Part shown: one piece after another, positions 13,363 to 43,033 of the stretch
How the letters are laid out: the number at the start of each line of letters is the position of its first letter
Numbering within the stretch: position 1 is the stretch's first letter
NCBI GenBank assembly: GCA_037447605.1
Contig: CM074807.1
Coordinates: 3,108,990-3,172,989 of the forward strand
Direction: 5' to 3'
DNA: 64,000 nt
From: Zygnema circumcarinatum SAG 698-1b
Taxonomy: Eukaryota > Plantae > Zygnematophyceae
The notes under the pieces: generated by a model
What the model saw: only the letters and a program-made list of their open reading frames with translations
Database searches by the model: none
What the model was told of the DNA's origin: nothing
Translations under genes and position numbers: made by a program

Positions 13363-13388
13363 AGACTTCCTTTTTTTAATCTGGGCAG

Positions 13389-14932: not shown

Positions 14933-15632
14933 ATGGATGTTTTGAAGCCACATAGCAGCTCAGATACTGGCACAATCAACAACAACTTGGAAATTGAAGC
15001 ATTACAGCACTACCTATGGGCTGTGATACCAGCACTGACTGGAGGTGATGCACAAGCCTTAGTCTCAGTATTACATTCTCCTGAAGGACGTGCTGTTCTC
15101 GATCGAGTTGTCAGGGACAAAGACTGCCCGGCTCTCTTGGTCCATCTGATTAAATCAGAGGAAGTTGAGTCCGACACCAACCCCACTGGTTCTCCTGAAC
15201 AGTTCAATGAAGTGGCTGCTCCAGTTTTTATAAGCTCAGAAAGGAAAGACCTCCGGCATTCAGTTGATTCGGATACCAATGGCGGAACAAGGAAGGACAG
15301 AGAACTGCATACATCGGTCGCTGAATCTGATGAACACCACACTGGCTCCTTAAATGGAAAATCTTCTACGCCAAAACCGGCCTCGGCTTCCGTCGATGCC
15401 TTCCGCCTTAGCTTTGACTGGAATGATGCCCGTAATGGTGTCTGCACTGCAGCATTTGTGCGACAGCAACGAAACATCCGGCTTGACAGGCCAATGCAGG
15501 AGCAGTTTCATGTTGTTGTGCTGCCTTCACGTGGCGTCCATGTTTCCGAAGTGCTTCAGCTCCACTGGCGAAGCTTTTTGCAACCGGCGATCGATTTCCA
15601 CCATCAAAAAATATACAATCGTGAGGACTTTG
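14933..15632 (+). CDS. Dynein exon 1: N-terminal dimerisation domain
   Basis: [17 protein letters not shown]...[15 protein letters not shown] and [25 protein letters not shown]...[13 protein letters not shown] resemble dynein-1 VLQKHLRKLVPLLLE...KFLSDPQVHTVLV and [24 protein letters not shown]...ETLHSFISNAVAP. Donor TTTG|GTAGGC. Confidence 0.8.
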
Positions 15633-18600
15633 GTAGGCGTCCAGAAACTCTCCAACTTTGAAAGCAAATTCAGATCCACGTACGACATTGGTGGAGTAAC
15701 TTTTATTCAGCTCCTTGTCTTGCGAACTTATAACACATAAATCCGACAAGGGTCTGGCTTACAAAAACGAAGCGTTTTATGAGAAAAATGATCCCACTCT
15801 TTCCCATCTTGACACATCCATTCATGGCATTTAAATCATAGGATGCTTGAGACTAGTCTGAACGGCTTTGGATATAAGCATGTTTTGGCACGTTCAGTTC
15901 ATGGCAACGAATCAAGACAGATTGCGATCCCTTTCACTTGGTAGCAGGGTGCAATGTAGACGACTGACGAAAACCTTGCCAAACCTTTCTTGTCAACGGA
16001 GCTTTGAAGCTCAGTGGTTAAACCTGAATGCATTATCCAAGTTGACTTGTTATCATGCTAGTACACGGCATGTATGTGCTTTGCTACATTGAAGAATTTG
16101 CTAAGTTCCTATTCTTCATCACGCAATGCACAGTCCACAGTAGTCCTTACCTTCAGCATACACCAGCCTTTCAGAAGTTCACAGGGTGTCGAGTATATTT
16201 GAACGGGGTTGTTGTAGTCACTTTAGAGCCTGATCAAGTATGATATGCTTGTCAGATCCTCTATTATGTTCTCGGAGACTGAAGTCAAAGTGAGTTCAAT
16301 CAGGTGTGAGCACGCGGCAAGAACCACATGACAAAGTGGAGCTATTTGTGGAAACTGTCGACACGTCAAGTTTGGACGTACCTCATGTTGAATTCGCACT
16401 CCATCCACGCATCCAAGATGCGGAAAAAAATGTGAGTTGCAATCCTTATGCCTGCACAGAACATTAACAAAGGAACCATGAAATCTCGACCTTGAATTGT
16501 CCCACGAATCTACTAATTTATTGTTCGTCTACATAAATCGAATTTTGCCTTCTGGTTTGCCTCGATGCGAAACCGTACTTTGATTGTAATGAACTCACAA
16601 ACAGCGAGGCAGGCAGAGGCTCAGTTGTGATTTTAATGTTAGTATTAGTTATTATTAATATTCTATGTGGGGAGCTGCTGTATTTCTGAATGGTGGATAT
16701 ATGTTTACCGTTCATTTGTTTGCTACATACTGCAAGGCCCCTCTCCAAGTTATGAGTTATCTCGAATGTTAACTGCTGTGAGCTGCCTTACGGTTGTTAT
16801 CCTGCCTTGCAGGTGTACGCAGAGTCCTGAAGTTGTTCACTTTCATTTAAGCACTCGCTGAAAGTATGACGTCTGGTTATAGGAAAATCGCACAGTTAAG
16901 ATATTAGCGTGCTCTACTGACTCGACTGCTATTTTTAGGCCTTTCTGACGTGTCACGCTTTGGAAGGCTGGTACAGAGCAAGCGTAAGGGATCCACATTG
17001 ACAATAAGAGAGGTGGAGGGGAATCTCAAGGACACAAAGTTCTTGAATGAGCTGCAACGGCTAGTAAGCAGCTGGACCAGATCGATCATGGATGTGACAG
17101 ACATGCGCTTGTAAGTTTACTTTTTGGAGCGGACACACACTTTTCCAATAGCTGCCTCTTTTGTCAAGTGAAGCTTTCTTTTTCAATTCACATGTTTGAC
17201 ATGCTATTGAGTTGTCCCGGCACATAGGGATGCTTGGCCATCTTCAGTACACCAGGAGATGGATTACTGGACAGCACTGCAAAATGAGCTGGACAATATT
17301 GATATGCAGCTGAAATCTCCTTCAGTTGGTATGTACTTCCATCCTAAATGATGACTTTTGACACGTCTTTTTTGTATAAAACTTTTGTTTGCTCTCCACA
17401 CGCAATACATGATTTGCGGGTAACGTTGAAAGCATAGCTTGCTGCCGTCTAAAGCTGAGAAGCTTTTTCAATACGTGACCATTTCACATGACCTATGAGA
17501 CCTCGTGAATTAACGACCATATAGGCATGATGGAGTTGCCATTGTAGACTTCAGCAAAGTCCTTACAGTCAATCATCATTACCATTGTTTACTTTATTGA
17601 AGTTGTCAGTGATGTAATTTTTGCCATCTTGAATGGCCTGATATGGAACACAGACTTTCTGCTTTCGTGCAGAGGTCACGTTGGCCATTGTTCGCCAGAG
17701 AGGGAAGGCAATAGAAGCAGAAAAGCGTCTGACTGAAGCCAAGAAGGAAGGTGAGCCTCTGTTTTGTTTGGATCCTTTTGATTGCTTCTCCAGTGTTATC
17801 CTTCTCCAAATAACAATGCATGACAAGCATCGGAAAATAGGAGCAGCAGGAAAATTGAGTATTGCTCGCTTTTCGGCTTTGCTGCTGTGTTTGATGATAG
17901 GTGATGAAGACCAATGTGTAGAGGCAGTCCAGGAAATACTTGTGCAAAAAGTTCATGGCCTTAAAAGCTTTACCTTCTGAGAGAAGCGATTTCTTCGCGA
18001 AGGCAACAAATCTGAAAGGATTTGTTAGGCCTGGCGTGCAAGTTGAATTCAGCCAAAAACTTGCTTCAAGGATTTACCAATTGTGGAAAGGAAGATCATG
18101 TTTCGCTTAGACTTTTCCTTGCCTCTGTAACATTAGAAAACGATGGCAGATTTTATCAGGAATTGGCGTCAGCTGGACGGTCGTGATTTTGATTATTAGT
18201 TCATGGTTGCTTATTCCGAGTTCATGAACCTGGATAGGCCTAGACAAGGCAATTGCTTGGGCCGTGGTTCTGCTGAACATCGGCAGAAGTTATAGCCCAC
18301 TTCAAGACATTGATTTGATGATATTCTTGACGGGATCGTTCTTTTGCTGTTGGTAAGCAGTGGCCATGTACCAACATATGCTGCGAGAGTTTCCCATATG
18401 CAAGCTGCCAAGCTCTGGCCGAATGAGCAAACTCAGCTCTGACCTTAAATCTGCCTTCAAGTAAGCGCTTGTGACACACCTTCAGCTGACATGTGCCCAG
18501 CCAAATGAGTTCGAATGTGGTGCATGAGAGGGTAGTCGTTCCATTCACAATCAGATCATAAGCTGATTAGTGAATTACTGAATTTTTGAAATTTTGACGT

Positions 18601-21600
18601 GATACAATGAAGGCATATGAGACAGCGGGCAAGCACAATGGGCCAACATGGAAACATGGACACAGAACCCAACAATGGGACGACAAGGACAGGAGAAGGA
18701 GCGCCACAGAGAGTGAATTTGCTCGTACACCGGAGCCTGGGATTGGCTGTAGCTATTGGGCGAGATATGCGACATCTTTTGGTGGAGTCCCTCATAGCTA
18801 TGGACCTAATGCAGGCTCCGTACGAGGAGTTTCAAAATGTGAGAAAATGTGTGGAAGAAAGGTTTGGGTTAATTGCTGCTCTACGTCAGTTTACAGAATG
18901 GACACATTGTAGTCTGCTGATTTGCTTTGGAATACCCTTCTCTCCTCTTGCCACATCATGGCAGGCTTCCTGGCGTCTTCATCTTTCACTAAGATCGCAG
19001 TAGTCTGCCAGGCTGCTGCACTCTCGGAAGATTTTGGATCTGAATGCCTCATTTTTTTGAGTTGTCTGCAGTTTAATTCTATGCTTTCTGCCAAGAAATT
19101 TGTATCAATATAGTCGTTTTTTCAGTCCCTAGGACTTATCTTGTCTACTGCTCCTGTGCTTTCCTGCATGTGTCAGTGATGATGAGTTTTTTCATGATGA
19201 TGATGTTGATGATGAGTTCTGATGAGTTTTTCAACTTGAACACAACTTAGCAGTTAGCTTACCTACACGTGTCTCTGTTTGGCTGGACAGGCAGTACAAA
19301 TGAGCACTGAAGTTCTTGAAACACTGGAAGAAGAGGCTGTCGATTACGGAAAGTTTGTTGCAGAAACGTGTGGAACTTCTTCCTTGCCTCAGCAGGTAAT
19401 CTCCTGCTGTGGGCGGGTTTGTTTGCTTGTGATTCAGAGTTTGAGTTCCCTTACCCTGTGCCTGTTATAGAATTTGACGCCTGTAGTCAAGTAGCGTGGC
19501 CACCACGGTTTGGTCAGGTTGCAGACTAGAAAAGTGACTAATCTTGAAATAGACTGGCAATGACATGCTTCCTAGATGCACTGCTCCATGCACAAGCCTT
19601 AGAACTGAATGTTCAATGGTTTTCAAAGCGAGTTCCTGACCTGTCATTGGGGATTACACTGTTTTCCTTCTTTTGTTGGTTGGCTGGTGTAGGACTTTAT
19701 TGGACAAATTGGGTCCATCTGTAACCCGCTGAAGAACCGACTACGGCTTCTGCAAACACTTCGGAGGCAGGTGGGTGAGGGGCAACTCATGTTCGTGTCC
19801 ATAGCCTTACAGGACCGACAGCAGTGCGGAGAGTCGATCGAGAAGTGGGGAGTCTGACTGGTGCATCGATAAGCAGGTCTATTATCTAAGGTTAAGCACT
19901 ACTTTCTTTATCTTTGAGCCGGACTGCCAGAAGAAGTTGATTTTCTCAAAGTCCAGGGTCGAGAGGAGTGGGAGAGGGGACAGGCGCAGAAGGGGAGGGA
20001 ATGGGGATGGGGAACGAAGGAAAGGGAGCAGGGCCGGGAGTGGGAGAGGTAGAGGGAGCAGAGGGAGAAGGTCCAGGGGCGAGAGGAGTGGGGAAGAAGC
20101 CAGGGGCGAAAGGAGAGGGAGATGGGGCGGGAGAGGAAGGAGAGGGAGAGGGGATTGGGAAGAGAGAGAACAGTGAGAGAGAGAACCATTATTAAAAGTT
20201 GGATTACTTATTGTTGTTCTCTCATACTCAATGTAGCAATAAATCGCTGGTCATCTGGCTTGTGAAGGCCAGATGACAAGTTCCAGTTATGTCCAGTTCA
20301 CGAGTCGTCTGACTCTGTTTCAATCTCATCATCGAGACAATCATATACCATTGACTTCTTGGCTAAGATGTTGTTAATGTCAACAGCATCAACAGCTTGC
20401 AGGGGTACTTGAGCCCGCCCTCGCCCCTTTTCTTCTCAATTTTAAGTATCGGGGTATGGAACATGATCTTGCGGCAGCCCTCCGCATTCTGGCCACAAGT
20501 GATGCTCTGAAATCCTCTCCAGGTGAAGCATGCAGTCCTTGTCGGCCTCGCATAAACCTACTCGAGTTGCACACTATTTGTATCCCGTCGTAACTGATCA
20601 GAGGAGCCCCAACAGAGCTTCAGTGTTATACCCTGAGCCACATGTGCAGAGATGAGTGGCGTGCTCATGATGCTTTGACTTAACATAAACGAACATAGCA
20701 CCTGCAATTGCCATATGCTGTCAGAGGATTGCCTCGAGTAGGTTCTCAGTTGCTTCACACGCAGATATGAGAATACAATTTCTACTGTTGCCAGGCTTCT
20801 TGGAATTCTGTACGACCCTAATTCCCTTCTATGATCCGATAAATCTGAGCTATACTCGAGACTTAGAGGCCTATTGTGCTTCATGTGAGAACCTGGGTTG
20901 ACTGATTCGGTAGGCAATCATGGCAGCGATCTTGATATTGATCTGCACAGTCCTCTGATTCCCCAACATGTACGTGAAGTACATTCTCACTTTCTGATTC
21001 ACCAATTGCTTGTTCTTTGCAGACAACCCCCAGCTTTGGGCGGCAGACTTGGCTGCCCATCAGCGGTGTGTGAGGGCCGTAGAAGATCAGATCGTGCTCG
21101 CCATCCGTGGAGTGCTTCGCGATTCCAGTGCAAGTTCAAGACTGAGAATTTTGCATGGGACGTGTGCATTGCTTGCCCGACCTCAGGTAGTATTTTTTTT
21201 TTGTTATAAAGTTCCCTTTTGCCGTGTCTGTGCAGTCTATTCTCCGTCCGCTTTTGCGGTTCCTCGTTCTGTGATGTAATCTGTCCTCCAATATTTTCGA
21301 ATGTCGCAAGCTCCAATTGGTTGTTGCTATGGTCCCTCCTCTTGTTCTTGCTTTTTGATGTCATTCTGTATCTTTTTATGTGCTTCTTGCGAGGTTAGTC
21401 GATTACAGATAGAAAGTAAGAGATGAAAGAACTTTTCCAATGCTTTCTAACCGTATTGTGCATTTTCAACCTTTTTTTCTCATGTTTTGCAGATCAGGGA
21501 GACATTGCTGAGGGACTGGACCGGTCTGGTCAGGTCGCTGCAAGTAGGTGAGCATGTACGGAATACCTCGAGATTTTCTTCATGCCAAGTTTTCGGCCAA

Positions 21601-24600
21601 TGTGTAGTTTACATATCAGAGATGAAGACAAGCTTTGAGGCATTTTTATGATTCTTCCGGTGCAGACTTGCGGAGGTTGAAGGGCAGATATGCTGCAACT
21701 TCAAACTCTCCAATGGAGCTTCATGCAGCAATTCTTTTCGGGGTCTCAAATGTACCAGGCAAGGCCAACGTGTTCATTGATCGTACTCCAATCAAAGCAT
21801 CTGCTTTTCGCACGTGTTTAAAACTAACCCATTGGCGGTAATCTGGCTCTAAGGATCAAAGTGTTGCAATATTAGATTACAGCAGCTTTCACAAACAGTG
21901 TTTCAAAGTGTGAGGTTTAAGAGAGTAACCAAACAAGAGGACTGACATAGCCAAGCGGTCGATAACAAATATCTGCCCCCCAGCAACTTGCCTTCTACTT
22001 TGCTACCTCGCCACTTTGCTACTTTGCTTTGCTACCCATTTATCGTTGTTACTACGAAATCATTAGGTTCTCGAGCACTCAGAAGTATGCTCCAAAAGTT
22101 TCTTCCAAAGGGCAGCACAAGCTCGGAGGCAGTTTGGACTCATGAGGAGGTATTTTGTGGCGCATGCGAACAGGTGCGGTCATGGAAACACTGCATATTC
22201 AGAGATGGCTCGCGGAGAAAACTCGGTGGTTGCAGGACTTGCTGGCAGCCATTGGGGATGATGTTGAAGCCCAAAATCTCATCTCCCAAATGAAGGCATT
22301 CCACTCCCAGCTGGATGCCCAAAAGGTCGCAATTCTCACAGCTCCTAGACATGAGGGCTATTGCGTGTGCCGTTTTCCCTTACATGGGGGCTGTGTAGCT
22401 ATTTCTTTGCAAAAAGTTAATCAGCAAAGTTTGGGAGTCATTGTGAGCGGAAGTTTACCTTGCTCGGGTCAGGGCTGGGATGCAGCTACTGAGCAGATGG
22501 CAGAAAGAAGCTGAAGGCTCAGGACTTGAGCTGACCGGCCCCGTTCTGGATATTGTGCCTGATGGTGCAGAGAATGGGTTTAAGGTGAGTCGTTTGGAGA
22601 CTACTCTTTGAAGTTTTTGCATTCAAATCTCGTCCAATGTTACAGCACGAGTTGGTTTTCATCGGTCAAAATATATACTCTTTCTCCTGCATGTTCCCAA
22701 AGTTAACTGTTGGTTCATGTTATAAGTGGGACAACCTGGCCTAGTTTGGAAGGTATTGGAGCTTTTGATGGAAAAAACCAATCGTATTCACTTAGAAAGA
22801 CTAGCAAGGTAAAGCCCTCCATCTGTAGCTGTTTGCTTAGGAACGTACTCACAGACTAGTTGGTAGTCCGAACTTCCTGTTTGACTTGCAAAGTAGGTAT
22901 GCCTCCGCCTCTGACTCTCCCGCTCACTGGTTTACTTCTGATTGCTACAGATGTTTCTCATATCCGTAACTAAGTTAGTTAAGCAGCACAAACGGACACT
23001 TCTTTGGATGCGGGGAATCTGAAACAATCTCTATGTGATGCAAATTTTAATCCTTTCTGCTGATCGATCTATTTCCTTAGTTTGAGCTTACATGCTGTTT
23101 ATCTGTGACACCAAGGCACGCTGTGCAAAGACGTGAAACGAAGGCTATAGACTTATTGTCAGGATCCTTCTTTGCCGGAATCACTTTCACTCGAAACAAA
23201 CAAATAATCGAAACCTTTCTACTGTACCTCTTACAGGTCCGTTACAACCCGAAGCTTGAACAATTTGCGAAGGATGTCCGCAGCTTGCAAGGGCTCGGCT
23301 GCCCCATTCCCCATTCTCTTCTTTCTTTGGCCTTTTCTGCCCATGAAGCCTTGCCTTCTGCAACAACATTAGAGCATGTTCTGTACTGTGTTTCGCGGTT
23401 GCGCGCTGCTCTTCCTTCGGAAGCATGGCTTTTGGTGGACGAGAGCTGGAAAGAAATGGATAAAATTCTTCGTGAAGGTATTCTTCACCCCTTGCTTCAC
23501 GTGCTTACTGACAGAAAGCACGACTCCGTTGACTGATGGGTTGGTTGACTGGTTAGTCAGTTGAGCTGTTCAGACAGTATAAATTTCTGCCAACATTGGA
23601 CGGCAATATTTAGCCTCACCACTACCCAAGTGTGCTCGCTTCTCTGACTCCTTTTAGTGAGGCAATTACTTCTCATTAAGGGCTATAATTGTGCTTAAGT
23701 CACACAAAGCAGCCAGTGAACGCATGTTATGAGCTGAGGCGTGTGCAGGACTTGACGTGGATTGGGACATGGACGAGGAAAGCCTTGAGGCCTATGTGAC
23801 TAGGGTTTGCGAAGCTTTTGAGTTGCTTGAAAACAGAATAATGGCAGTCAGTCGTCTGCATTTCAAGGCAAAAGAGGCCTTGGCTGCCCTTGCATCCTGC
23901 CCTTATCAGGTGAGTTTGCCACAAATCATAGGCTGCTATAGAAGGCGAATAGTTCTAAGTTATGCAGGTCCTGTACGCAAACCTCAGCAGGCAGACGATC
24001 TATTTGCCCGTTAATCCGTGTCCCATTGTTAACTGCAACTAGCAATATTCACCACTTTCTGACTTTCTACTTGTATTGCAGAATTGCATTCAGCATGATC
24101 CTTCTTTTGCTTGCTTATAAACTTGCTCTGATCCGCTTCTTTCCGCTGCCTTAGGAGCTCCCAAATGCCGTGGCCTGCCTTCAAGAAGTGACCCTCGAAG
24201 TGGAAGGGCCGGGCAGCTCAAGCACTGCCCTGCATATCTGGGCTGCCCCCTTCAAGCTTTGCGTCACACAGCACCTTTGGGAACGGGCCACAAATGCATT
24301 GTTCACCTGGCTGACACACTACTCAAAAGAGCAACTTGTGAGCCCTTCGCACAAGGTGAAACGTCTGCCATTTATTCGCATAAATACAAGCTGATGTTTC
24401 GTTGTGCAACGAGCCATGATGATTTCTGAAGCTGACATTGAATGTTGGGTAACTACTAGAATCTAGTGTTCAATCGAGGAAGGTGGGCGTGCAGGGGATA
24501 AAAATTGTGTTAAGTAATTTGGGTCAGTTTCAATACGAAATACGGATAGCGACAATGCTCGCTAAGGTTTGGTAGTGCAGTTCAAATTCGCTTAATTGAG

Positions 24601-33600: not shown

Positions 33601-36600
33601 TGAGATTATGGCTGCATGAGGGGTTACGGATATGGCGAGACAGACTATGGGCAGTTGAAGAGAAGGAATGGGTAGATCAGGAAATGGATATGCTGGTGCA
33701 AAGGTTTTTTCCTGAAACTGATGTCGTGTCTTGTATCACTCGCCCGATCTTTTACTCGACCTGGCTTTCATTTGGATATGAACCTGTCACTATGCCTCAA
33801 TTGGCAGAATTCTTAGAGAGGCAGCTGCTGATTTTCCAAGAAAGACAAGCAGTCGACGGCAGCAAAGACACTCCCAATGCGAATCCTGGTTTCCCTAAGG
33901 GCTGCAAACTGCTCATGTCCAAAGACATGGCCGAACGAGTCCTGCAAATGAGCCTTGTCCTGCAGAAACCGGGGGGGCATCTCCTTGTTGCGGGAAACAG
34001 TGGAACTGGAAAATCCACAGTTGCAGGATTTGCAGCGCAGTTAGCAGGTCTGCAGGTGGTAGTGGCTATCACTCACGGGGGATACACGGAAGGTCAGCTC
34101 GATGTTGACCTTTGGGCTCTCCTCCGAAGGGCCGGATGTGACGGAGAGGAGGTCTGTTTGCTGGTCGATGAAGCACAGGAGTTGCAGCCCAAAGCTCTGG
34201 AAAAGCTGCACTCCCTTTTGGCTTTTGGGGAAATTCCGGGACTTATAGGAGATGCGGATTTTCAGGTGAACGCCAAAATTCTGACTGAAAAGTTCATGCT
34301 GAATTCTGACTCTCTGTCCTAGCTTCTCTATAGCAAATTCAAGGCTTTTCACTGATTGTGAGTGGATGTGTGTCGCACGCTGAATGGAGTCGATAGGGCT
34401 GATTGAACGTCTAAATTGCATGAATACGATGTTCCAGACGACTGTAAAAAGAGGAAGATATTGGCGAGATTTGTTTAAGCTGGTCAAAGAATGAGCATGG
34501 CAATAACGCGAATGCCTACTGTATTGAGGGAGAGTAGGAAACCAACAGAACTGAGATTGCCCTGCTGAATTGTTTTTTCCTATTTTGTGATTCAGATCAT
34601 CCTCAAAGAGTGTGATGTTGCAGCCAAAGAGGAGGGCGAGAGTCTGGAGTCTACGGAGGAGCTTTACAACTTCTTTGTGGCACGGGTTTTGAAAAACCTT
34701 CACGTGTGCTTAGTGATGACAGCAACAGGCGAAAGGATTAGAGAATTGGCAATCTTTTGTCCTGCCCTTCTCAGTGACTGCGTTCTCCACTGGTGCACCC
34801 CCTTTTCTGACGATTCCCTGCTTGAAATGGCCATAGTGAGGGCAGCAGAAGCCATGCAAAAGCTTCATATACCCACCCTCGCATTTGAAGGGAAAGATAT
34901 AGCTCAGCAAAGCGGCACAACCAAATCAGATCTTCTGAGAGCCGAGCCTTTAGAGGTGAACAAGGCAATGGCAGGCTGTCTTGTAGCTATACACAAGGAA
35001 GCTGTTCGCGTCTTCAACAACCTTCCCCCCCCTCTGAATACCTGCGCCACACTTGCCTCCTTTCAGGACCTTTTGCAACACTTTGTTACTCTCTTTGGGA
35101 CATATCACAAAACAGCAAGCCAACAGCTTCTCCACCTCGAACAGGGTCTGTCGAAGGTGCAAACTGCAGAGCAAGAACTGGCAGAACTCCGCGTGCTATT
35201 AGCAGAGAAAGGCACAGAGCTGGAACAGAAACGGGCAGAAGCGACTCTAAAGCTGCTCGCTGTAGAGTCTGACCAGAGGCTGGTAGAAAAGCAGCAGAGC
35301 AGTGCTAACCAACTGGTTAGTCAGGTGGAGCAGCAGAAAAGGGACATTGGGGTCCGGAGGGAGGCAGCTCAGCAAGTGTTGGCAGAGGCAGAGCCGGCAG
35401 TGGAGGAGGCAAGGTCCGCAGTGCAATGTATGAAGAAGGCACACTTGGACGATCTGAGGTTCATGCCAAATCCTCCGGATTCGGTGAAACAGGTAACTCT
35501 CAGGATGTTTCCTGATTTAGCAACTTATGTCTGATTTTGCACATTTGAAAGACATGGTTGCATTACGGGACATTCAGAAATTTGAGCTAGGAGAAACTTA
35601 CCTCATTGCAGGAGTTAAGCTCGCTTCTGGGCAGACCTGAGGAATCGTGCAATTAGGTGCATGGCAGAATCTGATGACCCTTTGATATTCTAACGAGGTT
35701 TCTGTCGCGCAATGCAAACAGACTGAATAAGAAGTAAAGCAGAAACTGAAATTGCGCCTTTATTTGAAAGAATGATTGGTGACGAGTTTCTGAACTTGCC
35801 ACTAGCATGTATCACTTTGTACAGTTGTCAAATGACTGGGAGCGGGGATGCACGGACGAGAGATAGCGTGTTTGCTCCATTGCAGTATTAATGCCACCAA
35901 ATTCCTTATTTTGGAGAGAAAATGGGTATGGGTGGTGGATGGGCTTATCAGACCCTTGAAGGAGTCTGCCTCCTGCTCACCGGCTCCAAGCCCACCACGT
36001 GGCAAGCCATTCTGTCCATTGTCCGGCGATCAGACTTCATTGCCTCCATTTTGGCATTCCGCCTTTCATCTCTGAGCCAGTCCATTACATCTCGGATCCG
36101 TGCCGATTACCTGGATAACCCTAATCTATCCTTCAGCATCGTAAACAGGTACATTGCATGATTTTTTGGTCTTGCCTTCAACCTTGCACTTGCCGCAACA
36201 TTTTCTTCTGATCCTGGTCGACAAGCTATGCCATTATTAGCCTGTGTTGGGTTTTAGAGATTCAAGCAAACGGTAGCAGCCAATTGCAACAATGTGGCAA
36301 TGCAATACGAGCAGCTTGAATTAGCCAGTGTATCGCACGCTGAGCTCCCTCAGGGTTGACAGGAGACTACCGTTGTGAAACTATCTTGCAGAGCAAGTCG
36401 GGTCTGTGGTCCGTTGTATCGTTGGCTTGCAGCCGTTGTGGAGTATGGAGAGATTTTAGTCCGCGTGCAGCCACTAAGGGATGAAGTGGCGGGGTTGGAG
36501 GAGGAGTACAACAAAATGCAGCAGCGACTGGACGCATCACAGGTTCCTTTATGATCTTACTTTGCTGGCAGACTTGGTTTTATTCCCCTGACAACTGCTC

Positions 36601-39600
36601 CTAAAGAAACCGTGAAAGCACGTTTTGCACAACTTGTCATAGCCCCCTCCTGCATCTTGGCAAGGGGTGCCTATGAATAGGGCATCTAACGGACACTTTT
36701 TCAACATCTTCTCGTTTACTTCAACAATTTAAACTTGAACATAGAACTTCTTACCCTTCATGTGCATATATAGCCACCCCTTGAAAGTCTAATTGCTGTA
36801 ACTTTCTTGTGCATGCAGGCCCGTAGCAGAGAGCTTAAAAACCAGATAGCACAGCTGCTGGAAGACCATGCTGTACTGGGCAGGCAAGCTTCAATTATAG
36901 CAGCTGAAATGAAAGCTGCTAGCCAGAAGCTGAGGAGAGCCGAAGCCCTTATTGATGGGGTGGTGCAGGAACGGGCCCGATGGTACAGTGAGAAACAAAG
37001 TTTGACAATAGCAATAGGCTCGTTAGCTGGGAAGGCAGCACTTGGAGCTGCTTTCCTCGCCTATCTTGGCCCTCTCGATGAGAGTCAACGATCAGAGCTC
37101 ATGCAGCTCTGGGAGAGCATTCTTGTTGCATGTCCAACCCTTGGTACGAAGCCAAAGATGAACCAATTGGCCGATTTAGTCTGTACAGAAGATGAGCGTC
37201 TGTGGTGGGTGGGGAGAGGTTTGCCGGACGATGATATGGCGCTGCAGAATGCAAGCATTTTGGGAAAATCGCAGAGAGCATTATTGCTCGTTGACCCCTT
37301 AGGCCAAATGATGGAATTTTTCAAGATGTCTTTGCAAGCAAAGTGGCCGAAGGTTGGAGAAGTGAGCGCCATGGATAGCGAGTCGTTTGTAATTGGAGAG
37401 TTAGAATGCGCTGCCAGACTAGGATACCCCCTCATTGTTCGAGATGTTGTAGGCCAACCAAAGGCACTCGTGCCAATTCTATGCCAGTTAGGTTCAAGGC
37501 GAGCTGCAATGCAAACAGTAGTACAGCTCGGAGGGAGAGAAGTGTTTGTTGCTTCCTCTTTCAAGCTCGTGCTTGTGGCAAGAGCTGGTCTTGGGGAGGT
37601 TTCGGAAAGTCTTTGCAGCAAAGTTCTTGTACTCAGTGCAGCACTGACGAAAGCTGGGCTACAAAATACTCTTTTGAGTCGAATAGTGAGGGCATTGAGA
37701 CCAGAAATTGAGGCTCGGAGGACCGAAGCTCAGCAGCTTCAGGGACAATATCGGATGCGGATAACAGAGCTTGAACGCTCCCTACTGTCTGCACTTTCAG
37801 ACAGTCCAGTTGCCTTGGTCGAAAACGAGTCATTGTTGAATGTGCTTGAGAACATCAAGAATGAAGCGAGCGCGTTGGGAAAGAAAGCAGCCGAAGTAGA
37901 GGGAGCTTTGGAGCAGACACATGCAGCAAGAGCTCATTATGGAAAGTTAGCAACAGCATGCAGCCGAGCGTTCTTTGCACTCAAGGAACTGACGACTTTG
38001 AGTCCCCTATATCAGTTCTCTCTCAGTGCCTTTCTGGATGTATTCCAGTACGCATTAGCGAGAGAGAAAGCGAGGGTGGATGGTCTGCACACTGTAGAAG
38101 GAGAGGAGAGAGCTGAACACTTTCTGCTGGAGATATTGTGGACTGTTCTGAATCGTTATTCGAGCAGTTTGCAGAGCGCACATCATGTGCCCTTGGGCCT
38201 ACGGCTCGCTCAGGCAGCTCTTGAAGCCCGGGAGAGCGGTCCGGTGAATGCAGAACATCTCTCCCTTTTGGCAGGTCAGTACCAATGGTTGGTTGTTGGA
38301 GCAGCCAGCACCGGGGAGGCTCTTGATGAGAGAAAGAAAGGATCAAGTACTGGTACAAGCAAAGGGCATAGTTCGGAAGGTGAAATGTGGCAAGGGTTGG
38401 AGCAGTTATTAACCAAAAGGCAGAGGAATGAGCTGGCAAAGCTGTTTTACATTCTGCCACGGGGAAGCCTTTTACTGGAGAAATTTGTGGAGTTCGTCAG
38501 AGCGGGTGATTCCGCAGATTTGACAAGCAGTTCTGGAGAGAGACAACGAGGTTATCCTCGAGCAATTTGGGAAAAAGCAGTCGCTTCTTTGGCTGATTTT
38601 TCTAGTGAACATGAAGCCCCTGGCACTACAGTTGAGTGCACCACTTGCTGCATGAGATTGGCGGACGTTCAAGAAAGGACGCCATGCAGATCCTGTCATG
38701 ACAAAGCCATTTTGGTGGAATTTATTGGTCTGCTTGTCGCAATCGTTGTGAACCCAGCCGAGTTCAAAGAAAAGGCTATGCAGTTTGTGGCGGCTGTGTT
38801 GTGCCCAAGGCCTGCCTCAGCAACAGGTCTTCCTCGTGGGGAGAGCTCTGATGAGCGTAGCGTAGTGCGTTTAGCATTGCCAAACCTGTCCACCTTTGTC
38901 CTCAATGAAAGCAGCAGCACGCGGCCTGTCTTGCTTGTCTGCATGCCCAACTGCGATCCTACGGCTGACATTGCTGCTCTTGCACACCAAGCACACGAAA
39001 GAGGAATTCGCCACTTCGAATGCATCGCTATGGGCTCTGAAGACACTCTCTCTCTCGCAGAAGCAGCCGTGCTATCGGCAGCTCGGGAAGGGCAATGGGT
39101 CGTTTTACAGAACATTCACTTGGCCAGCGGTTGGCTTCCCGCCCTTGAGAAGCTGCTGCGGGGTGCACCTTCTAAGGGAGAGTTTCGTCTCATTCTCACT
39201 ATGGAGGCGGCGGGGCAGAGAGCAGTCCCTCCAAGTCTTGTGGAGGCTTCCGACGTGCATGTTATGGAGGCTCCCCCGGGGTTGAGAGCGAGTTTGCAGG
39301 TGGGTTTTTTCTGCTAGTGAGGAATCACATGTTGCGACCCTATGAAGTTCAGTAAATGAGCTGTGTGTTTCCCACATTGCTTCTAAATGAATCAGAGAGC
39401 AAGAGACGGGGATTGTGGCTCGTTAGAGTCCGTTTACGAACCCGAGATCGGTGACGGCCATAGCCTTTGTTAGCTTGTTACTGAGTTTTAGCACACGGTG
39501 TTATTTCTATGGGGCAGAGGTCTCTTGTCCTGCTGGGGGAGGAGCGAACATTGCCTTTGGAGGCTCTGCGAGTGGCGGTCCTTTTGGCGTGGCTGCATGC

Positions 39601-42098
39601 GGTGCTGCTAGAACGGCTCCGCTATGTCCCCATAGGGTGGTTTCATCGCATAAATTTCAGTGATACGGTAAGCTCATATTCCGATGCATCTTTCAGCCAT
39701 GCAATGTCCAATGCTCCTAGTGCAGTGTTAACCCCCTCCCAAAGCAATTCAGATTTTTTTGATTGCAGTGGTCATTTGTTTCAGTTATCTTATTGTGGTT
39801 GTAAGTGCTGGCAGTATGTCAAAGTCTAAGAGGTGTTCCAACGCTCGTCAAGAAAAACAATCTTCATGAAATTCGATGAGCATGGTTATGTGGAATGGCC
39901 ATCGACCTTTTTGCATATCATCAGCTCAACAACTGTTCAGGCTGACTAACTTGAGAAGAACAATGCTTGACTGGTTGAAAGTCAGACCTTTTGATTGAAC
40001 CTGCCCTAGACATATTGAGAACTTCCTCCCTTTTCTGAATTTGTCAGTTCTAATGTGTTTTAGGAAGCGAGCTACTTGTCTCTTTCTCGGAGTGCACAGT
40101 CTACCTGCTTCTCTGTAATGCGACTCTCGGCTGTAGTGACTAGCTAATCCGAGCAAATGACTTCGTTTTTTTCTATGCTGAACTTCTGCATTCAGGACTT
40201 CCGAACTGCCCTTGCCACAGTTGTTGTTTGGCTACGAGCCTCCTCCACAAAGGGCGACAATTCCCATTCGGGAAATATCCCTTGGACTTCGCTGACAACA
40301 CTCCTTATTGAGACTGTCTATGGACAAAAGCTGGAATCGGAACAAGATAGGGAAATTCTTAGGGCACTCGTTCACCGCTACCTCTCTCCTCCCGCAGGCT
40401 CGGCCGGTTTCACTCTCACGGGTCCCCTCCCCTCACTCGAGTTACCTTCTGACCAAGAATTGCATATAAGCTCTCAGATTGGCGTTGTGGGTTCAGCAGT
40501 GAAGCTGCCCGAGGCTGAAAATTTGCAGGATTACATCCTCTGGGTTGAGAATCTCCCTCAGGATTGTCCTCCTGAATGGTTGGGGCTATGGGCCGGAGCA
40601 GAAGACTTAAGAGTTGGAAAGGAATGTCGGCGAATTCTTGCAGACTTTTGGTCTCTGCAGATTGCAGGAGCACAGGGTGTCACAACGAAGCAGACGGTGA
40701 GTTCAGGGATGGAGGTTGTCACAAGGAAGCAGACAATGAGTTTAGGGATGGAGGGTGAGGTGAAAAAGAAACAGCAAATTTCTCCGTCTTCTCAGCCCAT
40801 CAGAAACGCAATGGTGGTTAATAAGCGCTCTAGTTCACGTGCTTTAGCCAGTAGACCCTTCGTCAATGAAGGCAGTAAGGTAAACAGTGAAGGTGTGTTG
40901 GGTATGCCGAAGATGAACCTAGACATTAGTCAGGAAATGGAGAGATGGCTGACGGATTTGGACGAAGTTGGGTTTATGGAATCAAAAGCTGAAGTGTCCA
41001 GGGGGAAAGTATCACTACCAGCTCCAATCATGCGTTGGCTGATGCGTGAATTTGACACTGGGGCTTCCTTGCTCGGAGAAGTTCGAGATCAACTGAGGGC
41101 AGTCTTGAATTCCGGTATTCTGCACACATCATTGCCACACTCCCTCTCAAAGAGCCCAGCAGATAAGTCTTACCAGGGGGAGGAATTCATGTCGATAACG
41201 AGGCAAGAAGTTCCGCAGAGGTGGCTACAGCTGAACGGTCAAAAGCAGCAATCAACAAGGGGTCCATTGGGACCTTGGCTCATACTGCTCCGTCGTCGAC
41301 TCCTTCACCTTGTTCAGCGTTGCCGAGATATCACTTCTGGGAAGAGTAAAGAATCAGAAGGGGGGGCTGGTAGCATTCTTATTACTGGTGATTGGTGGCT
41401 GGGAGGATTATTCCACCCTCGGTCCTTTCTCAGTGCTTGCAAGCAGGTGGCTTCCCAGGTCTTCCATTGGCCGATAGAGGAACTCGTGCTCTCAGTTCAT
41501 GTGAGATACTCTCCAGATTCTGATCCTTCGAAAAAGGTGAAGGCTGATGAAGGGGTGAATCCACTGATTCGTGTTACAGGTAAAGCTCAAATGTGTCTTT
41601 TTTATTCATGGCTTCAACCGAGTTTTTCTGATTGCAATTATCAGGCCCTGTTGCAGCTCCTACGTCGTTCCAAACATGCACATATCCTCATTTGTTCATG
41701 ACAACTTTTGGACCTGCTTTCACTGTACGGTTGCAGGCTTGCAGCTCCAAGGATGTTTCTGGGAAAGCGGTACTCTCGTTCTCAAGCCCGGCTTGTCATC
41801 GTTGTCAAAAAACATGACTAACGCTTCTGCATCAGACTCCGTGTCAGTTCTGCCAACAGTTGCAATCTCATGGAGTCCGTCGGCTGCTGCCTCACTGAAA
41901 GAAAATGGCGGTGAGGGTGACTCGGAGAGCTCGTCCATTGAGTCCAATTCAGTGGCATCACAGGGAATGGTCGCAGTGCCTGTCTTCTTGGATGAAACAC
42001 GCACAACTCTCCTCTTTTTCGCAAAGCTGAGGGCTAAAGGTAGTGCGAGCTCTTGGCTGCAACAAGGTGCAGCCATTCTTGCTTTGGGCGTTTTATGA
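14933..42098 (+). CDS. DYNC1H1: Cytoplasmic dynein-1 heavy chain, full length, ~30 exons (roughly 5,300-5,500 aa by summing approximate exons)
   Basis: Collinear similarity to dynein-1 from the N-terminal dimerisation domain through tail, linker, AAA1-4, stalk/MTBD, AAA5-6 and C-terminal domain. Dynein-1-type motifs: [103 protein letters not shown], and C-terminal [14 protein letters not shown]...QGAAIL. GT-AG junctions are phase-consistent throughout the motor region. Confidence 0.93.
16730..24356 (+). CDS. Dynein tail (DHC_N1) encoded by ~17 small exons; boundaries approximate
   Basis: Exon peptides in the expected order: [55 protein letters not shown]...[41 protein letters not shown]...[44 protein letters not shown]. 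Confidence 0.75.
19960..20185. repeat. GA-rich polypurine tract inside a dynein intron
   Basis: ~220 bp of G/A-rich low-complexity sequence seen directly. Confidence 0.8.
24684..27250 (+). CDS. Dynein large exon: distal tail/neck and start of the linker (DHC_N2)
   Basis: [22 protein letters not shown]...[12 protein letters not shown]...[16 protein letters not shown]...VRGLDE...KTSPY...VQQSW|V matches the dynein-1 linker. Donor TGG|GTAAGG. Confidence 0.9.
27501..29973 (+). CDS. Dynein linker end and AAA1 (exons 27501-27818, 28179-29474, 29791-29973)
   Basis: [13 protein letters not shown]; [18 protein letters not shown]; Walker A GPAGTGKT; Walker [10 protein letters not shown]; sensor-[17 protein letters not shown]. 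Confidence 0.95.
30282..31375 (+). CDS. Dynein AAA1 small domain and AAA2 (exons 30282-30781, 31041-31375)
   Basis: Sensor-[12 protein letters not shown]; Walker A GPTSAGKT; IDPKS...[16 protein letters not shown]; [21 protein letters not shown]. Confidence 0.95.
31756..34264 (+). CDS. Dynein large exon: end of AAA2, AAA3 and start of AAA4
   Basis: LPNGERL...ATVSRLGM (AAA1 Arg finger intact); VPTVDTTRH; GPPGCGKS; VFCNRINQP (degenerate Walker B); RFLRH; YSPRDLSRW; GNSGTGKST; LLVDEAQ; LAFGEIPGL. Confidence 0.95.
34596..36542 (+). CDS. Dynein AAA4 end, coiled-coil stalk and microtubule-binding domain (exons 34596-35492, 35951-36148, 36391-36542)
   Basis: KNLHVCL; HLEQGLSKV...[33 protein letters not shown]|TLEGVCLLL...TWQAI...[15 protein letters not shown]|[11 protein letters not shown]...VQPLRDEV. 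Confidence 0.93.
36819..42098 (+). CDS. Dynein AAA5, buttress, AAA6 and C-terminal domain (exons 36819-39300, 39519-39667, 40196-41579, 41738-42098)
   Basis: LLVDPLGQ; [16 protein letters not shown]; [41 protein letters not shown]; FRLILTME; [10 protein letters not shown]; [15 protein letters not shown]; [10 protein letters not shown]; PPEWLGL; [17 protein letters not shown]; GLQLQG; stop TGA at 42096-42098. Confidence 0.93.
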
Positions 42099-43033
42099 TG
42101 GAGTTGAAGAAAGGCACCCCAAAGGAGGACAGGAGATCGAGATCGATGGATGATGATACGCAGTTTCAGGGTCCTCATTGAATTAACATTCCAGTTGAAA
42201 ATAAGTCTCGTCGACTAAGTTAACCGTGATAGTGTATAGTGTTCGCGTTGTCATTTAGAATTGTAGTCGATGACAGACCTCCCATCACAGCCATTATTTC
42301 CTCCAGTAATGGAACCATTGGTGAGTCAATTGGGGGTCGACTTTCTCAATGAGAGAAGCACTGCAGACAGTGGGTGGGAGATTGGTACCTTTAGCCAAAT
42401 TGGTCCATTATGGCTTCAATGCAAGGAAGAGAAGGCTTTGTGGGAACAGCATGTCTGGTGAAGCTGACGCTTTAGGTTAGGAATAGGGCAAAGCCGAGCG
42501 CAGTGATGGAGATTTGGTCTACTACCAAATCTCTGGTTTACGCTTTTCACGCCAGTCGTGACGATCTGAGCAAATTTTCTTTTAAGAGATCTCTTTATTT
42601 TTCGATTTTGGCGATGTACAGATTTGTCTACAGCTTCACAAAAGGTACTCCAGTCTCGGGTGCTGTTATCCTACAAGCAACCTCGTGGGTGGTTGACATT
42701 GGAGCATCTCTGCCAAGCAACAGCTAAACGTCGCTTTATTGTTCTTTCCTCTCTTGCCCGTGAGGAGTGGAAACAGATAAGATAACAAATGATTGAATTC
42801 CTGCTCTATTGACCCTACTGGTATTGGAGACTGCATTGGCACATGATGATGAGTGGGTGATGATGGATGCATCTAAAGAGATGCGCCATGGGAATGACAT
42901 GCCATCGCCGATCCCCAAAGTCCTCTATCTATCTCAGCCAAACCATGTTTGGTAACACAGCACCGACTAATTCCATGGATGGAAGATGCTTCTATCGGAG
43001 GACAATTGGTAGTATGCACCGCTGCAAGGTAGA

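What the first reader, a model, noticed from the sequence alone, without database searches (positions are those of the whole stretch)
14933..42098. Complete cytoplasmic dynein-1 heavy chain in a green-plant (streptophyte) genomic context
Seen: a full-length, splice-phase-consistent dynein heavy chain from dimerisation domain to C-terminal domain. Diagnostic residues follow dynein-1 (QLGRF, FDxQA, EERxLSAVSQQ, [22 protein letters not shown], LCGPPG, VFC-x-x-IN). They do not follow dynein-2 (recalled: LLGRQ, IDVKS, EESVLSAVSMQ, CDGDIDPEWIESL) or axonemal dyneins (recalled: KDLxKAL...FNCSD). Its neighbours (plant-type UPF3, ABCB26, PTP1, Asterix) share the same intron style. Established: comparative surveys describe cytoplasmic dynein-1 as absent from sequenced chlorophytes and land plants, with minus-end transport handled by kinesin-14s; plants with flagellated cells keep only axonemal dyneins and dynein-2. 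Inference: this lineage retained or re-acquired a cytoplasmic minus-end motor, which would change the timing of dynein-1 loss in Viridiplantae. It would be more striking still if the host is a non-flagellated zygnematophyte. I cannot confirm it is unreported.
Basis: partly seen in the sequence, partly recalled or inferred. Interest (0 to 1): 0.95.

Follow-up and report, generated by a model that had tools for sequence, protein, structure and literature searches.

The report
Cytoplasmic dynein-1 gene in streptophyte alga
A green alga from the land-plant lineage carries an intact, transcribed and correctly spliced gene for the heavy chain of cytoplasmic dynein-1, a microtubule motor that the literature says the whole green lineage lost, and its closest relative is a dynein-1 of another streptophyte alga, Mesostigma.

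Summary
Window 14933-42098 (+) encodes one dynein heavy chain of about 5,300 residues in about 29 exons. The motor part (25511-42098) is a single 4,168-codon frame across 13 GT-AG introns. RNA contigs from three studies confirm the three introns that were laid.

Five exons score far higher against solved dynein-1 chains than against dynein-2 or axonemal chains. The tail is colinear with dynein-1 tails but weakly conserved.

One 33-kb short-read DNA contig links the gene to Asterix, DTW and ABC-transporter genes. The DTW gene's named relatives are all land plants.

No protein above about 43% identity exists among 15 billion proteins. The best whole-motor match (37-38%) is a Mesostigma viride protein. 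The two group at 100/99 support once other long branches are removed. This favours vertical retention in Streptophyta over transfer or contamination.

AAA1 and AAA4 catalytic motifs are intact. AAA3 keeps Walker A but has lost Walker B, sensor-1 and the arginine finger.

Every paper I could search, up to 2026, states that Viridiplantae lack dynein-1.

Not shown: motor activity, partner subunits, 5' exon structure, and the host's class. The zygnematophyte identity rests on earlier scan notes only. This scan noted the same stretch before (s1-341374, s1-341349).

The parts
14933..42098 (+). Whole dynein-1 heavy chain gene, start ATG to stop codon. About 29 exons and about 5,304 codons; the length depends on the provisional tail model.
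14933..15632 (+). Exon 1 (provisional), N-terminal region of the tail
   Evidence: It is the start exon chosen by the ab initio model. Residues 140-230 align to Mesostigma P0016 residues 95-183 at 26% identity, pairwise E 1e-4. No Pfam hit. No RNA check.
16304..23909 (+). Fourteen provisional internal tail exons: 16304-16431, 16977-17063, 17699-17900, 18361-18460, 18666-18867, 19291-19395, 19919-20048, 20403-20522, 21023-21186, 21498-21547, 22083-22173, 22486-22584, 23237-23477, 23749-23909
   Evidence: Ab initio splice and dicodon model. The resulting tail peptide matches the dynein-1 profile colinearly at E 2.8e-24. Weak colinear profile hits also appear. At least one profile hit (17214-17330) is not in the model, so the model is incomplete.
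24683..27250 (+). Large exon covering the distal tail and the start of the linker (DHC_N2)
27501..27818 (+). Linker exon
28178..29474 (+). Exon with the end of the linker and AAA1. Walker A GPAGTGKT lies at 29183-29206 and Walker [20 protein letters not shown] at 29333-29389.
29790..31375 (+). Three exons (29790-29974, 30283-30781, 31041-31375) covering the AAA1 lid and AAA2. Walker A GPTSAGKT lies at 30745-30768 and [22 protein letters not shown] at 31310-31375.
31755..34265 (+). Large exon covering the rest of AAA2, all of AAA3 and the first half of AAA4
32733..33131 (+). AAA3 nucleotide site. Walker A GPPGCGKS is kept (32733-32756). Walker B DE is replaced by NR in [10 protein letters not shown] (32943-32972). 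Sensor-1 N and the arginine finger are lost in [14 protein letters not shown] (33090-33131).
33993..34178 (+). AAA4 site. Walker A GNSGTGKS and Walker B LLVDEAQ are both intact.
34596..36542 (+). Three exons (34596-35492, 35952-36148, 36392-36542) covering the end of AAA4, the stalk coiled coil and the microtubule-binding domain
36819..39299 (+). Large exon covering the return of the stalk, AAA5 (AAA_9) and the start of AAA6 (Dynein_heavy)
   Evidence: Its 3' junction to 39518 is seen in RNA.
39518..42098 (+). Last three exons (39518-39667, 40196-41579, 41737-42098) covering the AAA6 lid and the C-terminal domain, with the stop at 42096-42098
   Evidence: Introns 39668-40195 and 41580-41736 are skipped in RNA contigs of X20, X25 and X19.
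42099..43082 (+). 3' untranslated region (upper bound). It overlaps the last exon of the convergent Asterix gene.
   Evidence: RNA contigs run on to 43082 and then show minus-strand (CT..AC) joints. ASTER domain on the minus strand.

Best explanation
This is a genuine nuclear gene of a streptophyte alga. It encodes a full-length cytoplasmic dynein-1 heavy chain inherited vertically from the streptophyte ancestor. It is not a contaminant, a recent transfer, or an IFT or axonemal dynein.

Shown:
- The gene is intact, transcribed and spliced.
- It is physically linked to plant-type genes.
- It belongs to the dynein-1 class.
- It is sister to the Mesostigma viride dynein-1.

Inferred mechanism:
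- The protein works as a microtubule minus-end-directed AAA+ motor driven by ATP hydrolysis at AAA1, whose Walker A and B motifs are perfectly conserved.
- AAA2 binds nucleotide and AAA4 is competent.
- AAA3 still has a P-loop but cannot hydrolyse. The AAA3 switch that tunes microtubule release in canonical dynein-1 is therefore fixed. This predicts either a slow, tightly microtubule-bound motor or tether, or a motor that has bypassed this gate.
- The tail is strongly diverged and there are about 600 residues of insertions in the motor. This suggests partners that differ from the canonical intermediate-chain, light-intermediate-chain and dynactin set.
- If the host really lacks flagella, the function must be cytoplasmic: organelle or nucleus positioning, or spindle organisation.
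For: Domain order and colinearity with dynein-1.

Five exons score 60-300 bits higher against solved dynein-1 chains than against dynein-2 or axonemal chains.

The top hits among 1.84 billion representatives are cytoplasmic dyneins of fungi, an oomycete, a choanoflagellate, Anaeramoeba and Mesostigma.

There are 13 canonical introns and an open 4,168-codon frame. RNA contigs of 6.7-7.7 kb from three studies use the predicted junctions.

One 33,150-nt DNA contig with no differences spans the dynein, Asterix, DTW and ABC genes. The DTW neighbour hits only land plants among named proteins. Composition and intron sizes match the neighbours.

The window protein and Mesostigma form a clade at 100/99 support and at 99.8 in a second set. 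With an axonemal outgroup both sit together at the base of a 100%-supported dynein-1 ingroup.

Conservation along the protein tracks the dynein-1 profile: 62% identity in the AAA1 core and 51% in AAA2. The stalk and microtubule-binding columns are 48% identical to Mesostigma against 35% to other dynein-1s.

Motif states are shown.
Against: The branch is very long, 2.3-4.1 substitutions per site against 0.8-1.1 for Mesostigma. Its place moves when other long branches are present. FastTree joins it to P0138. The 38-row tree joins it weakly (58) to P0142/P0120. LG+G4 prefers that join by 7.7 lnL, although the Mesostigma grouping is not rejected (AU p = 0.42). With the outgroup the pair has SH-aLRT of only 6.

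No dynein-2 or inner-arm sequence was available for the trees, so exclusion of those classes rests on scores against solved chains.

No relative closer than about 43% identity was found anywhere, so presence in other zygnematophytes is unknown.

The DNA run may be the assembly's own source.

The 5' third of the gene has no RNA check.

A dead AAA3 and a diverged tail could also mean loss of the ancestral motor role.

Partner subunits were not searched.

The Mesostigma label comes from one EukProt record.
Confidence: 0.8

Rival explanations
1. Horizontal transfer: the gene entered this alga, or the streptophyte stem, from a non-plant eukaryote. Its plant-like introns and neighbours would then reflect long residence.
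For: The consensus says the green lineage has no dynein-1 (PMC5100056, PMC9237703). No chlorophyte or land-plant relative appeared among the 150 best representatives or the 120 best relatives of the Mesostigma protein. The deep backbone around the pair is poorly resolved (supports 28-88).
Against: The pair is not nested in any supported donor clade. Opisthokonts, dictyostelids and stramenopiles are each recovered at 98-100 support without it. Two streptophytes as far apart as Mesostigma and this alga share it, so any transfer would predate their split and be indistinguishable from retention at this sampling. The gene has 13 or more spliceosomal introns of host style.
Confidence: 0.1
2. Expressed relic: the gene descends from dynein-1 but no longer acts as a processive transport motor. 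It would serve instead as a static microtubule tether or scaffold, or be on the way to loss.
For: AAA3 has lost Walker B, sensor-1 and the arginine finger together. The rate is three- to four-fold faster than in Mesostigma. The tail is barely recognisable. Whole-motor identity to canonical dynein-1 is only 33-35%.
Against: More than 5,000 codons carry no stop or frameshift. AAA1 motifs are perfectly kept and AAA4 is intact. The conservation profile follows functional modules. Transcript contig depth is similar to or higher than that of the neighbours in three studies. Another natural dynein-1 (P0138) shows the same AAA3 losses.
Confidence: 0.15
3. Misclassification: the protein is a very diverged dynein-2 (IFT), an axonemal chain, or one of the orphan dynein classes, and only looks like dynein-1.
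For: The branch is long and basal in rooted trees. No dynein-2, inner-arm or orphan-class sequences were in my trees.
Against: Every exon tested prefers solved dynein-1 chains. For the AAA2-4 exon even the very diverged yeast Dyn1 (244 bits) beats dynein-2 (145) and axonemal chains (165 or less). The tail matches only the DYNC1H1 tail. The stalk exon gives no dynein-2 hit at E 1e-5. The ingroup is separated from outer-arm chains at 100%.
Confidence: 0.04
4. Contaminant or chimeric scaffold: the dynein belongs to a fungus or protist living in the culture and was joined to algal DNA by the assembler.
For: Earlier 'plant dyneins' turned out to be fungal or algal contaminants (PMC9237703). The DNA runs that hold it may be the assembly's own data.
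Against: A separate assembly of short reads gives one gap-free 33-kb contig covering window positions about 20.1-53.3 kb, across the dynein, Asterix, DTW and ABC genes. The Asterix transcript overlaps the dynein 3' UTR. RNA from 2019, 2023 and 2024 studies carries the transcript at 99% identity or more. The nearest relative is a streptophyte protein, not a fungal one.
Confidence: 0.01

Closest known systems
Cytoplasmic dynein-1 heavy chain of model organisms (human DYNC1H1, e.g. PDB 5nug; Dictyostelium DhcA, PDB 3vkg/3vkh)
   Same: Same domain order. AAA1 Walker A and B are identical in sequence. Conserved blocks are shared (QLGRF, EERxLSAVSQQ, [21 protein letters not shown], LCGPPG). The tail matches DYNC1H1 residues 1032-1545. 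These are the best-scoring solved chains for all five exons tested.
   Different: Only 33-35% identity over the motor, against 45-75% among canonical dynein-1s in most stretches. About 5,300 residues instead of about 4,650, with insertions such as one after the AAA3 large domain. The AAA3 catalytic residues are lost. The N-terminal 900 residues are barely alignable.
Mesostigma viride protein Mv03759-RA.1 (EukProt EP00899, id P0016, 5,654 aa)
   Same: Nearest relative in the trees (100/99; 99.8). Highest whole-motor identity, 37-38%. Shared derived stalk and microtubule-binding region at 48% identity. Similarly over-long. Also from a streptophyte alga.
   Different: The Mesostigma protein is an ordinary dynein-1, 43-48% identical to animal, fungal and amoebozoan motors, with an intact AAA3 (DE, N and R all present) and a short branch. 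Mesostigma is a flagellate.
Yeast Dyn1 AAA3 Walker-B mutant E2488Q (PDB 7mgm)
   Same: A dynein-1 whose AAA3 can bind but not hydrolyse ATP. It is the laboratory analogue of the natural state seen here. From my own knowledge of published work, such mutants are slow and stay tightly bound to microtubules.
   Different: It is an engineered single substitution in an otherwise normal motor. Here three elements are lost and the protein has had a long time to compensate. The behaviour of this protein is untested.
Dynein-1 of lineages without dynactin (Piroplasmida; Hammesfahr and Kollmar 2012, PMC3583065)
   Same: A precedent for a dynein-1 heavy chain in organisms that lack the unique dynactin subunits. 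That paper also reports no unique dynactin subunits in the plants it surveyed.
   Different: Whether this alga has dynactin, intermediate chains, light-intermediate chains or LIS1 was not examined here.

Membership tests
Cytoplasmic dynein-1 heavy chain (DHC1 / DYNC1H1 class) | One polypeptide with tail, linker, AAA1-AAA4, stalk with microtubule-binding domain, AAA5-AAA6 and C-terminal domain, in that order | tested here: met
   Pfam domains in order. Colinear match to a profile of 20 full-length dynein-1 chains from position 164 to 4486.
Cytoplasmic dynein-1 heavy chain (DHC1 / DYNC1H1 class) | Closer to dynein-1 than to dynein-2 or axonemal chains along the whole length | tested here: met
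   Best bits, dynein-1 / dynein-2 / axonemal: tail-linker exon 126 / none listed / 48; AAA1 exon 239 / 176 / 158; AAA2-4 exon 448 / 145 / 165; stalk exon 118 / none listed / 56; AAA5-6 exon 290 / 204 / 184.
Cytoplasmic dynein-1 heavy chain (DHC1 / DYNC1H1 class) | Falls inside the dynein-1 clade in a tree that holds the other dynein classes | tested here: inconclusive
   It groups with about 100 dynein-1 chains against two outer-arm chains at 100%. No dynein-2, inner-arm or orphan-class sequences could be obtained, and the protein sits at the base of the ingroup.
Cytoplasmic dynein-1 heavy chain (DHC1 / DYNC1H1 class) | Tail homologous to the dynein-1 tail (dimerisation region and intermediate / light-intermediate chain binding region) | tested here: inconclusive
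   The distal tail matches DYNC1H1 residues 1032-1379 at 74 bits (PDB 6f38) and residues 1386-1545. The proximal tail gives only weak colinear profile hits at E 1e-3 to 1e-2, E 2.8e-24 for the assembled model. Exon 1 against the Mesostigma N-terminus gives E 1e-4. Binding sites were not assessed.
Cytoplasmic dynein-1 heavy chain (DHC1 / DYNC1H1 class) | Catalytically competent AAA1 (Walker A GPAGTGKT, Walker B DE) | tested here: met
   GPAGTGKT and [19 protein letters not shown] match the consensus of the dynein-1 chains aligned, with only minor substitutions among them.
Cytoplasmic dynein-1 heavy chain (DHC1 / DYNC1H1 class) | Hydrolytic AAA3 site (typical of dynein-1 and important for its regulation, but not what defines the family) | tested here: not met
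   Walker B DE is replaced by NR. Sensor-1 GACNP reads ASCIS. The arginine finger GR reads GS. Walker A is kept. One other natural dynein-1 (P0138) shows the same losses.
Cytoplasmic dynein-1 heavy chain (DHC1 / DYNC1H1 class) | Assembles with intermediate, light-intermediate and light chains and is activated by dynactin, adaptors and LIS1 | not testable with these tools
   The rest of the genome cannot be searched here. Scan notes hold no entry for dynactin.
Cytoplasmic dynein-1 heavy chain (DHC1 / DYNC1H1 class) | ATP-driven movement towards microtubule minus ends | not testable with these tools
   Needs a motility assay.
Dynein-2 (IFT dynein, DYNC2H1 / Chlamydomonas DHC1b) | Best similarity to DYNC2H1-type chains | tested here: not met
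   Human dynein-2 scores 145-204 bits where dynein-1 scores 239-448. It is absent from the tail and stalk hit lists.
Axonemal dynein heavy chains (outer and inner arm) | Best similarity to, and clustering with, axonemal chains | tested here: not met
   Axonemal chains score 184 bits or less. Two outer-arm chains (P0177, P0178) are separated from the protein by a 100%-supported branch.

The most novel reading that the evidence does not exclude
[quoted passage not shown] In a flagella-less zygnematophyte it survives as a remodelled motor with a permanently non-hydrolysing AAA3 and a rebuilt tail. That motor would work without the canonical dynactin-based machinery, which would make the loss in land plants a late and separate event.
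Probability: 0.35. Interest if true: 0.9.

Novelty: new member of a known kind. Interest (0 to 1): 0.8.

Why it matters
Plant cell biology takes it as settled that the green lineage has no cytoplasmic dynein-1. On this view kinesin-14s took over minus-end transport, and the lack of dynein-1 shaped acentrosomal spindles and the phragmoplast. A 2026 review still argues this way (PMC13443282).

An intact, expressed dynein-1 heavy chain in an alga on the land-plant line, with an orthologue in Mesostigma, replaces one early loss with several later, independent losses.

It also gives a concrete gene for testing what dynein-1 does in a walled, plastid-bearing cell. It allows a test of whether the motor can work with a dead AAA3 and possibly without dynactin. 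And it helps date when the kinesin-14 takeover happened.

Tried and rejected
**Searches for close relatives**
- A word-index search with the 908-aa exon found only two weak axonemal fragments.
- An exact look-up of an ORF product found no record.
- A JGI metagenome scan found no relative.
- The 150 best representatives reach at most 43% identity.
- Distribution in other zygnematophytes therefore remains unknown.

**Gene model of the tail**
- The first ab initio tail model over-split into 45 tiny exons and was discarded.
- The second model has 16 exons and is provisional.

**Trees and tests**
- FastTree joined the protein to P0138. This was rejected as long-branch attraction. P0138 moves into a stramenopile-type clade under the C20 mixture model, and it shares only the AAA3 decay.
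- The careful search on the labelled set with outgroup did not finish in about 390 s.
- The AU test under the mixture model made no progress. It was replaced by an LG+F+G4 AU test.
- The AU test of window + Mesostigma + P0246 did not finish.

**Sequences and papers not obtainable**
- No dynein-2 or inner-arm sequences could be obtained for the trees.
- Supplements of Lucas and Geisler 2022 and of the Zygnema genome paper held nothing usable.
- Cheng et al. 2019 (Cell) is not held, so I cannot exclude a mention there.

**Other points**
- Scan notes had nothing on dynactin.
- UPF3 was not found by Pfam in ORF pieces.
- P0246 carries a 'tig...' identifier that I recall as the Cyanophora paradoxa style. 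This is from memory and unverified.

Full report
**1. Is the gene there?**

ORF pieces on the + strand between 24.6 and 41.7 kb carry dynein heavy chain domains in canonical order. These are DHC_N2, AAA_6 (AAA1), Dynein_AAA_lid, AAA_7, AAA_8, the MT stalk, AAA_9, Dynein_heavy, AAA_lid_11 and Dynein_C.

I built a profile from 20 full-length cytoplasmic dyneins recovered. It maps colinearly on the window from profile position 164 (window 16980) to 4486 (window 42083). Motor E-values reach 1e-194. Tail pieces upstream of 24.6 kb give only 1e-3 to 1e-2.

At each of the 13 junctions of the motor I enumerated all frame-compatible GT/GC-AG pairs and scored the joined peptide against the profile. The top choice was always a textbook site (cagGTGAGT ... 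TGCAG) with an intron of 157-528 nt.

Joining these exons from 25511 to 42098 gives 4,168 codons with a single, terminal stop.

For 14.9-25.5 kb I used a dicodon and splice-site dynamic programme. A lax version over-split. A stricter one gave 16 exons starting at the ATG at 14933. Its 1,136-residue tail matches the dynein-1 profile colinearly at E 2.8e-24. This part is provisional, and one profile hit (17214-17330) is not in it.

Exon 1 residues 140-230 align to residues 95-183 of the Mesostigma protein at pairwise E 1e-4. The model totals about 29 exons and about 5,300 residues.

**2. Expression, splicing and linkage**

Many public runs of one organism label hold the long exon. Several, probably RNA, hold 76-86% of a 6-kb stretch that includes introns.

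I laid one DNA and three RNA-type runs on 39501-45500. RNA contigs of 6.7-7.7 kb came from three different studies (2019, 2023, 2024). They skip exactly 39668-40195 and 41580-41736.

They begin at 39514 with an overhang that equals window 39266-39295. This is the predicted 39299|39518 junction, given a four-base GCAG ambiguity. These contigs extend 3.8-4.9 kb further upstream than the laid stretch.

The DNA run gives a single 33,150-nt contig with no differences and no joints. From its coordinates it covers about 20.1-53.3 kb of the window. That span includes most of the dynein gene, Asterix, DTW and the ABC transporter. This run may be the assembly's own source. It shows that the join is not a scaffolding artefact, but it is not fully independent.

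**3. Neighbours and host**

| Side | Pfam families |
|---|---|
| Upstream | protein-tyrosine phosphatase |
| Downstream | DTW, ABC_membrane/ABC_tran (minus strand, about 49-52 kb), ribosomal S14/S29e, Asterix, a 2OG-Fe(II) oxygenase, ribosomal uL5 |

UPF3 was not seen. Asterix is convergent with the dynein gene and its transcript overlaps the dynein 3' UTR.

The DTW exon's named relatives are only land plants: Diphasiastrum, Ginkgo, Calypogeia and Marchantia.

| Composition | Exon GC | Intron GC | Intron length |
|---|---|---|---|
| Dynein | 0.50 | 0.43 | mean 314 nt |
| Neighbours | 0.48 | 0.41-0.43 | 232-626 nt |

Earlier notes of this scan call the genome a zygnematophyte. I did not verify the class, so I claim only 'streptophyte'.

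**4. Which dynein?**

| Exon | Region | Dynein-1 | Dynein-2 | Axonemal (best) |
|---|---|---|---|---|
| 24596-27271 | tail / linker | 126 | not listed | 48 |
| 28178-29473 | AAA1 | 239 | 176 | 158 |
| 31596-34322 | AAA2-4 | 448 (Dictyostelium), 400 (human), 244 (yeast) | 145 | 165 |
| 34596-35492 | AAA4 / stalk | 118 | not listed | 56 |
| 36807-39317 | AAA5-6 | 290 | 204 | 184 |

Values are best bit scores against solved chains.

I searched 1.84 billion representatives with the 908-aa exon. The named proteins among the best hits are cytoplasmic dyneins of Hortaea, Coemansia, Pythium, Salpingoeca, Anaeramoeba, Kipferlia, Chilomastix, Nannochloropsis, a cercozoan and Mesostigma viride.

No hit exceeds 41% identity over the exon, or 43% over AAA1-AAA4.

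**5. Origin**

The Mesostigma protein (P0016, EukProt EP00899, Mv03759-RA.1) is an ordinary dynein-1. It is 43-48% identical to animal, fungal and amoebozoan motors.

The window protein is 33-35% identical to those motors and 37% to Mesostigma.

| Analysis | Result |
|---|---|
| FastTree, 106 rows | Basal, next to another long branch |
| LG+C20+F+G4 (PMSF), axonemal outgroup | Dynein-1 ingroup at 100%; window protein and Mesostigma adjacent at its base |
| Same, outgroup present | Their mutual branch is unsupported (SH-aLRT 6) |
| Whole motor, no outgroup, 38 rows | Drawn weakly (58) to fast-evolving P0142/P0120 |
| 30 rows x 2,935 columns, other very long branches removed | Sister to Mesostigma: 99.8 SH-aLRT (quick), 100 UFBoot / 99 SH-aLRT (careful) |
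| Second, labelled taxon set | Sister to Mesostigma at 99.8 SH-aLRT |
| LG+F+G4, P0142/P0120 put back | Grouping costs 7.7 lnL and is not rejected (AU p = 0.42) |

Opisthokonts, dictyostelids and stramenopiles are recovered with 98-100 support and exclude the pair.

Per-window identities agree with this. In the stalk and microtubule-binding columns the two streptophyte proteins are 48% identical to each other, against 35-38% to other dynein-1s.

I therefore favour vertical descent from a streptophyte ancestor that still had dynein-1. A very old transfer into the streptophyte stem cannot be told apart at this sampling.

**6. How it probably works**

| Site | State |
|---|---|
| AAA1 | Walker A GPAGTGKT and Walker B block [19 protein letters not shown] match the dynein-1 consensus |
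| AAA2 | Keeps its P-loop |
| AAA3 | Keeps GPPGCGKS; VVFCDEINLP reads [10 protein letters not shown]; sensor GACNP reads ASCIS; arginine finger GR reads GS |
| AAA4 | Keeps Walker A and Walker B (LLVDEAQ) |

Mesostigma keeps all three AAA3 elements, so the loss is specific to this lineage. One stramenopile-type metagenomic dynein-1 (P0138) lost them independently.

Identity to canonical motors peaks in the AAA1 core (62%) and AAA2 (51%). It falls where all dynein-1s vary. That is the pattern of a protein under selection, not of a decaying one.

From published work on AAA3 mutants, which I cite from my own knowledge, a site that binds but cannot hydrolyse ATP gives slow, tightly microtubule-bound dynein. 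So this protein may be a slow motor or tether, or it may have bypassed the gate.

The diverged tail, also noted in s1-341374, argues for non-canonical partners. So does the reported absence of unique dynactin subunits from plants (PMC3583065). All of this section is inference.

**7. Is it known?**

- Kollmar 2016 states that DHC1 was lost at the origin of Viridiplantae.
- Lucas and Geisler 2022 confirm there is no true dynein-1 in Chlamydomonas and land plants.
- The Zygnema genome paper mentions only a contracted 'dynein-coding' orthogroup, and reads it as reflecting loss of motile gametes.
- A 2026 review still builds on the lack of cytoplasmic DYNEIN1 in streptophytes.
- Eight full-text searches found no report of dynein-1 in Mesostigma or any zygnematophyte.
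- Cheng et al. 2019 and several supplements could not be read, so an unindexed mention cannot be excluded.

**8. Verdict**

The kind of protein is well known. Its presence, intact and expressed, in the land-plant lineage is not. I rate it a new member of a known kind, with an unusual AAA3 and tail, and give it an interest of 0.8.

The main open points are:
- the long branch;
- the missing dynein-2 and inner-arm sequences in the trees;
- the unverified 5' exons;
- the unknown partner subunits;
- the host's class.

Noticed in passing
window 43082-44170, minus strand: The Asterix (PAT complex) gene is convergent with the dynein gene. Minus-strand introns 43083-43314 and 43416-44041 are seen in RNA. 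Its last exon overlaps the dynein 3' UTR, so RNA contigs merge the two transcripts and the dynein poly(A) site is not fixed.
   Followed up: partly
window 44834-45224, plus strand (DTW gene): Two donor sites 12 nt apart are used in different runs: 44834>45224 in X20 and 44846>45223 in X25. This may be an alternative 5' splice site that keeps the frame. X19 also shows a weak opposite-strand joint, 44801>45091.
   Followed up: no
protein P0138 (ENA metagenome, 4,604 aa): A dynein-1 that groups with stramenopile-type sequences has independently lost AAA3 Walker B, sensor-1 and the arginine finger. It is a natural precedent for an AAA3-dead dynein-1, and it caused a false long-branch join in FastTree.
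   Followed up: partly
protein P0016 (Mesostigma viride, EukProt EP00899, Mv03759-RA.1): A regular cytoplasmic dynein-1 heavy chain is present in the Mesostigma gene set. Neither the Mesostigma/Chlorokybus genome paper that I could read nor any searchable paper mentions it as such.
   Followed up: partly
window 728-2407 (+), 9940-12183 (+), 12535-13674 (+), 60397-61851 (-): Long open reading frames of 379-747 codons have no Pfam match. They may be disordered parts of neighbouring genes.
   Followed up: no
window 33300-33500 (after the AAA3 large domain): There is an insertion of about 50 residues, rich in Ser and Pro, where most dynein-1s have none. Mesostigma and a cercozoan dynein-1 have shorter insertions at the same spot.
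   Followed up: no
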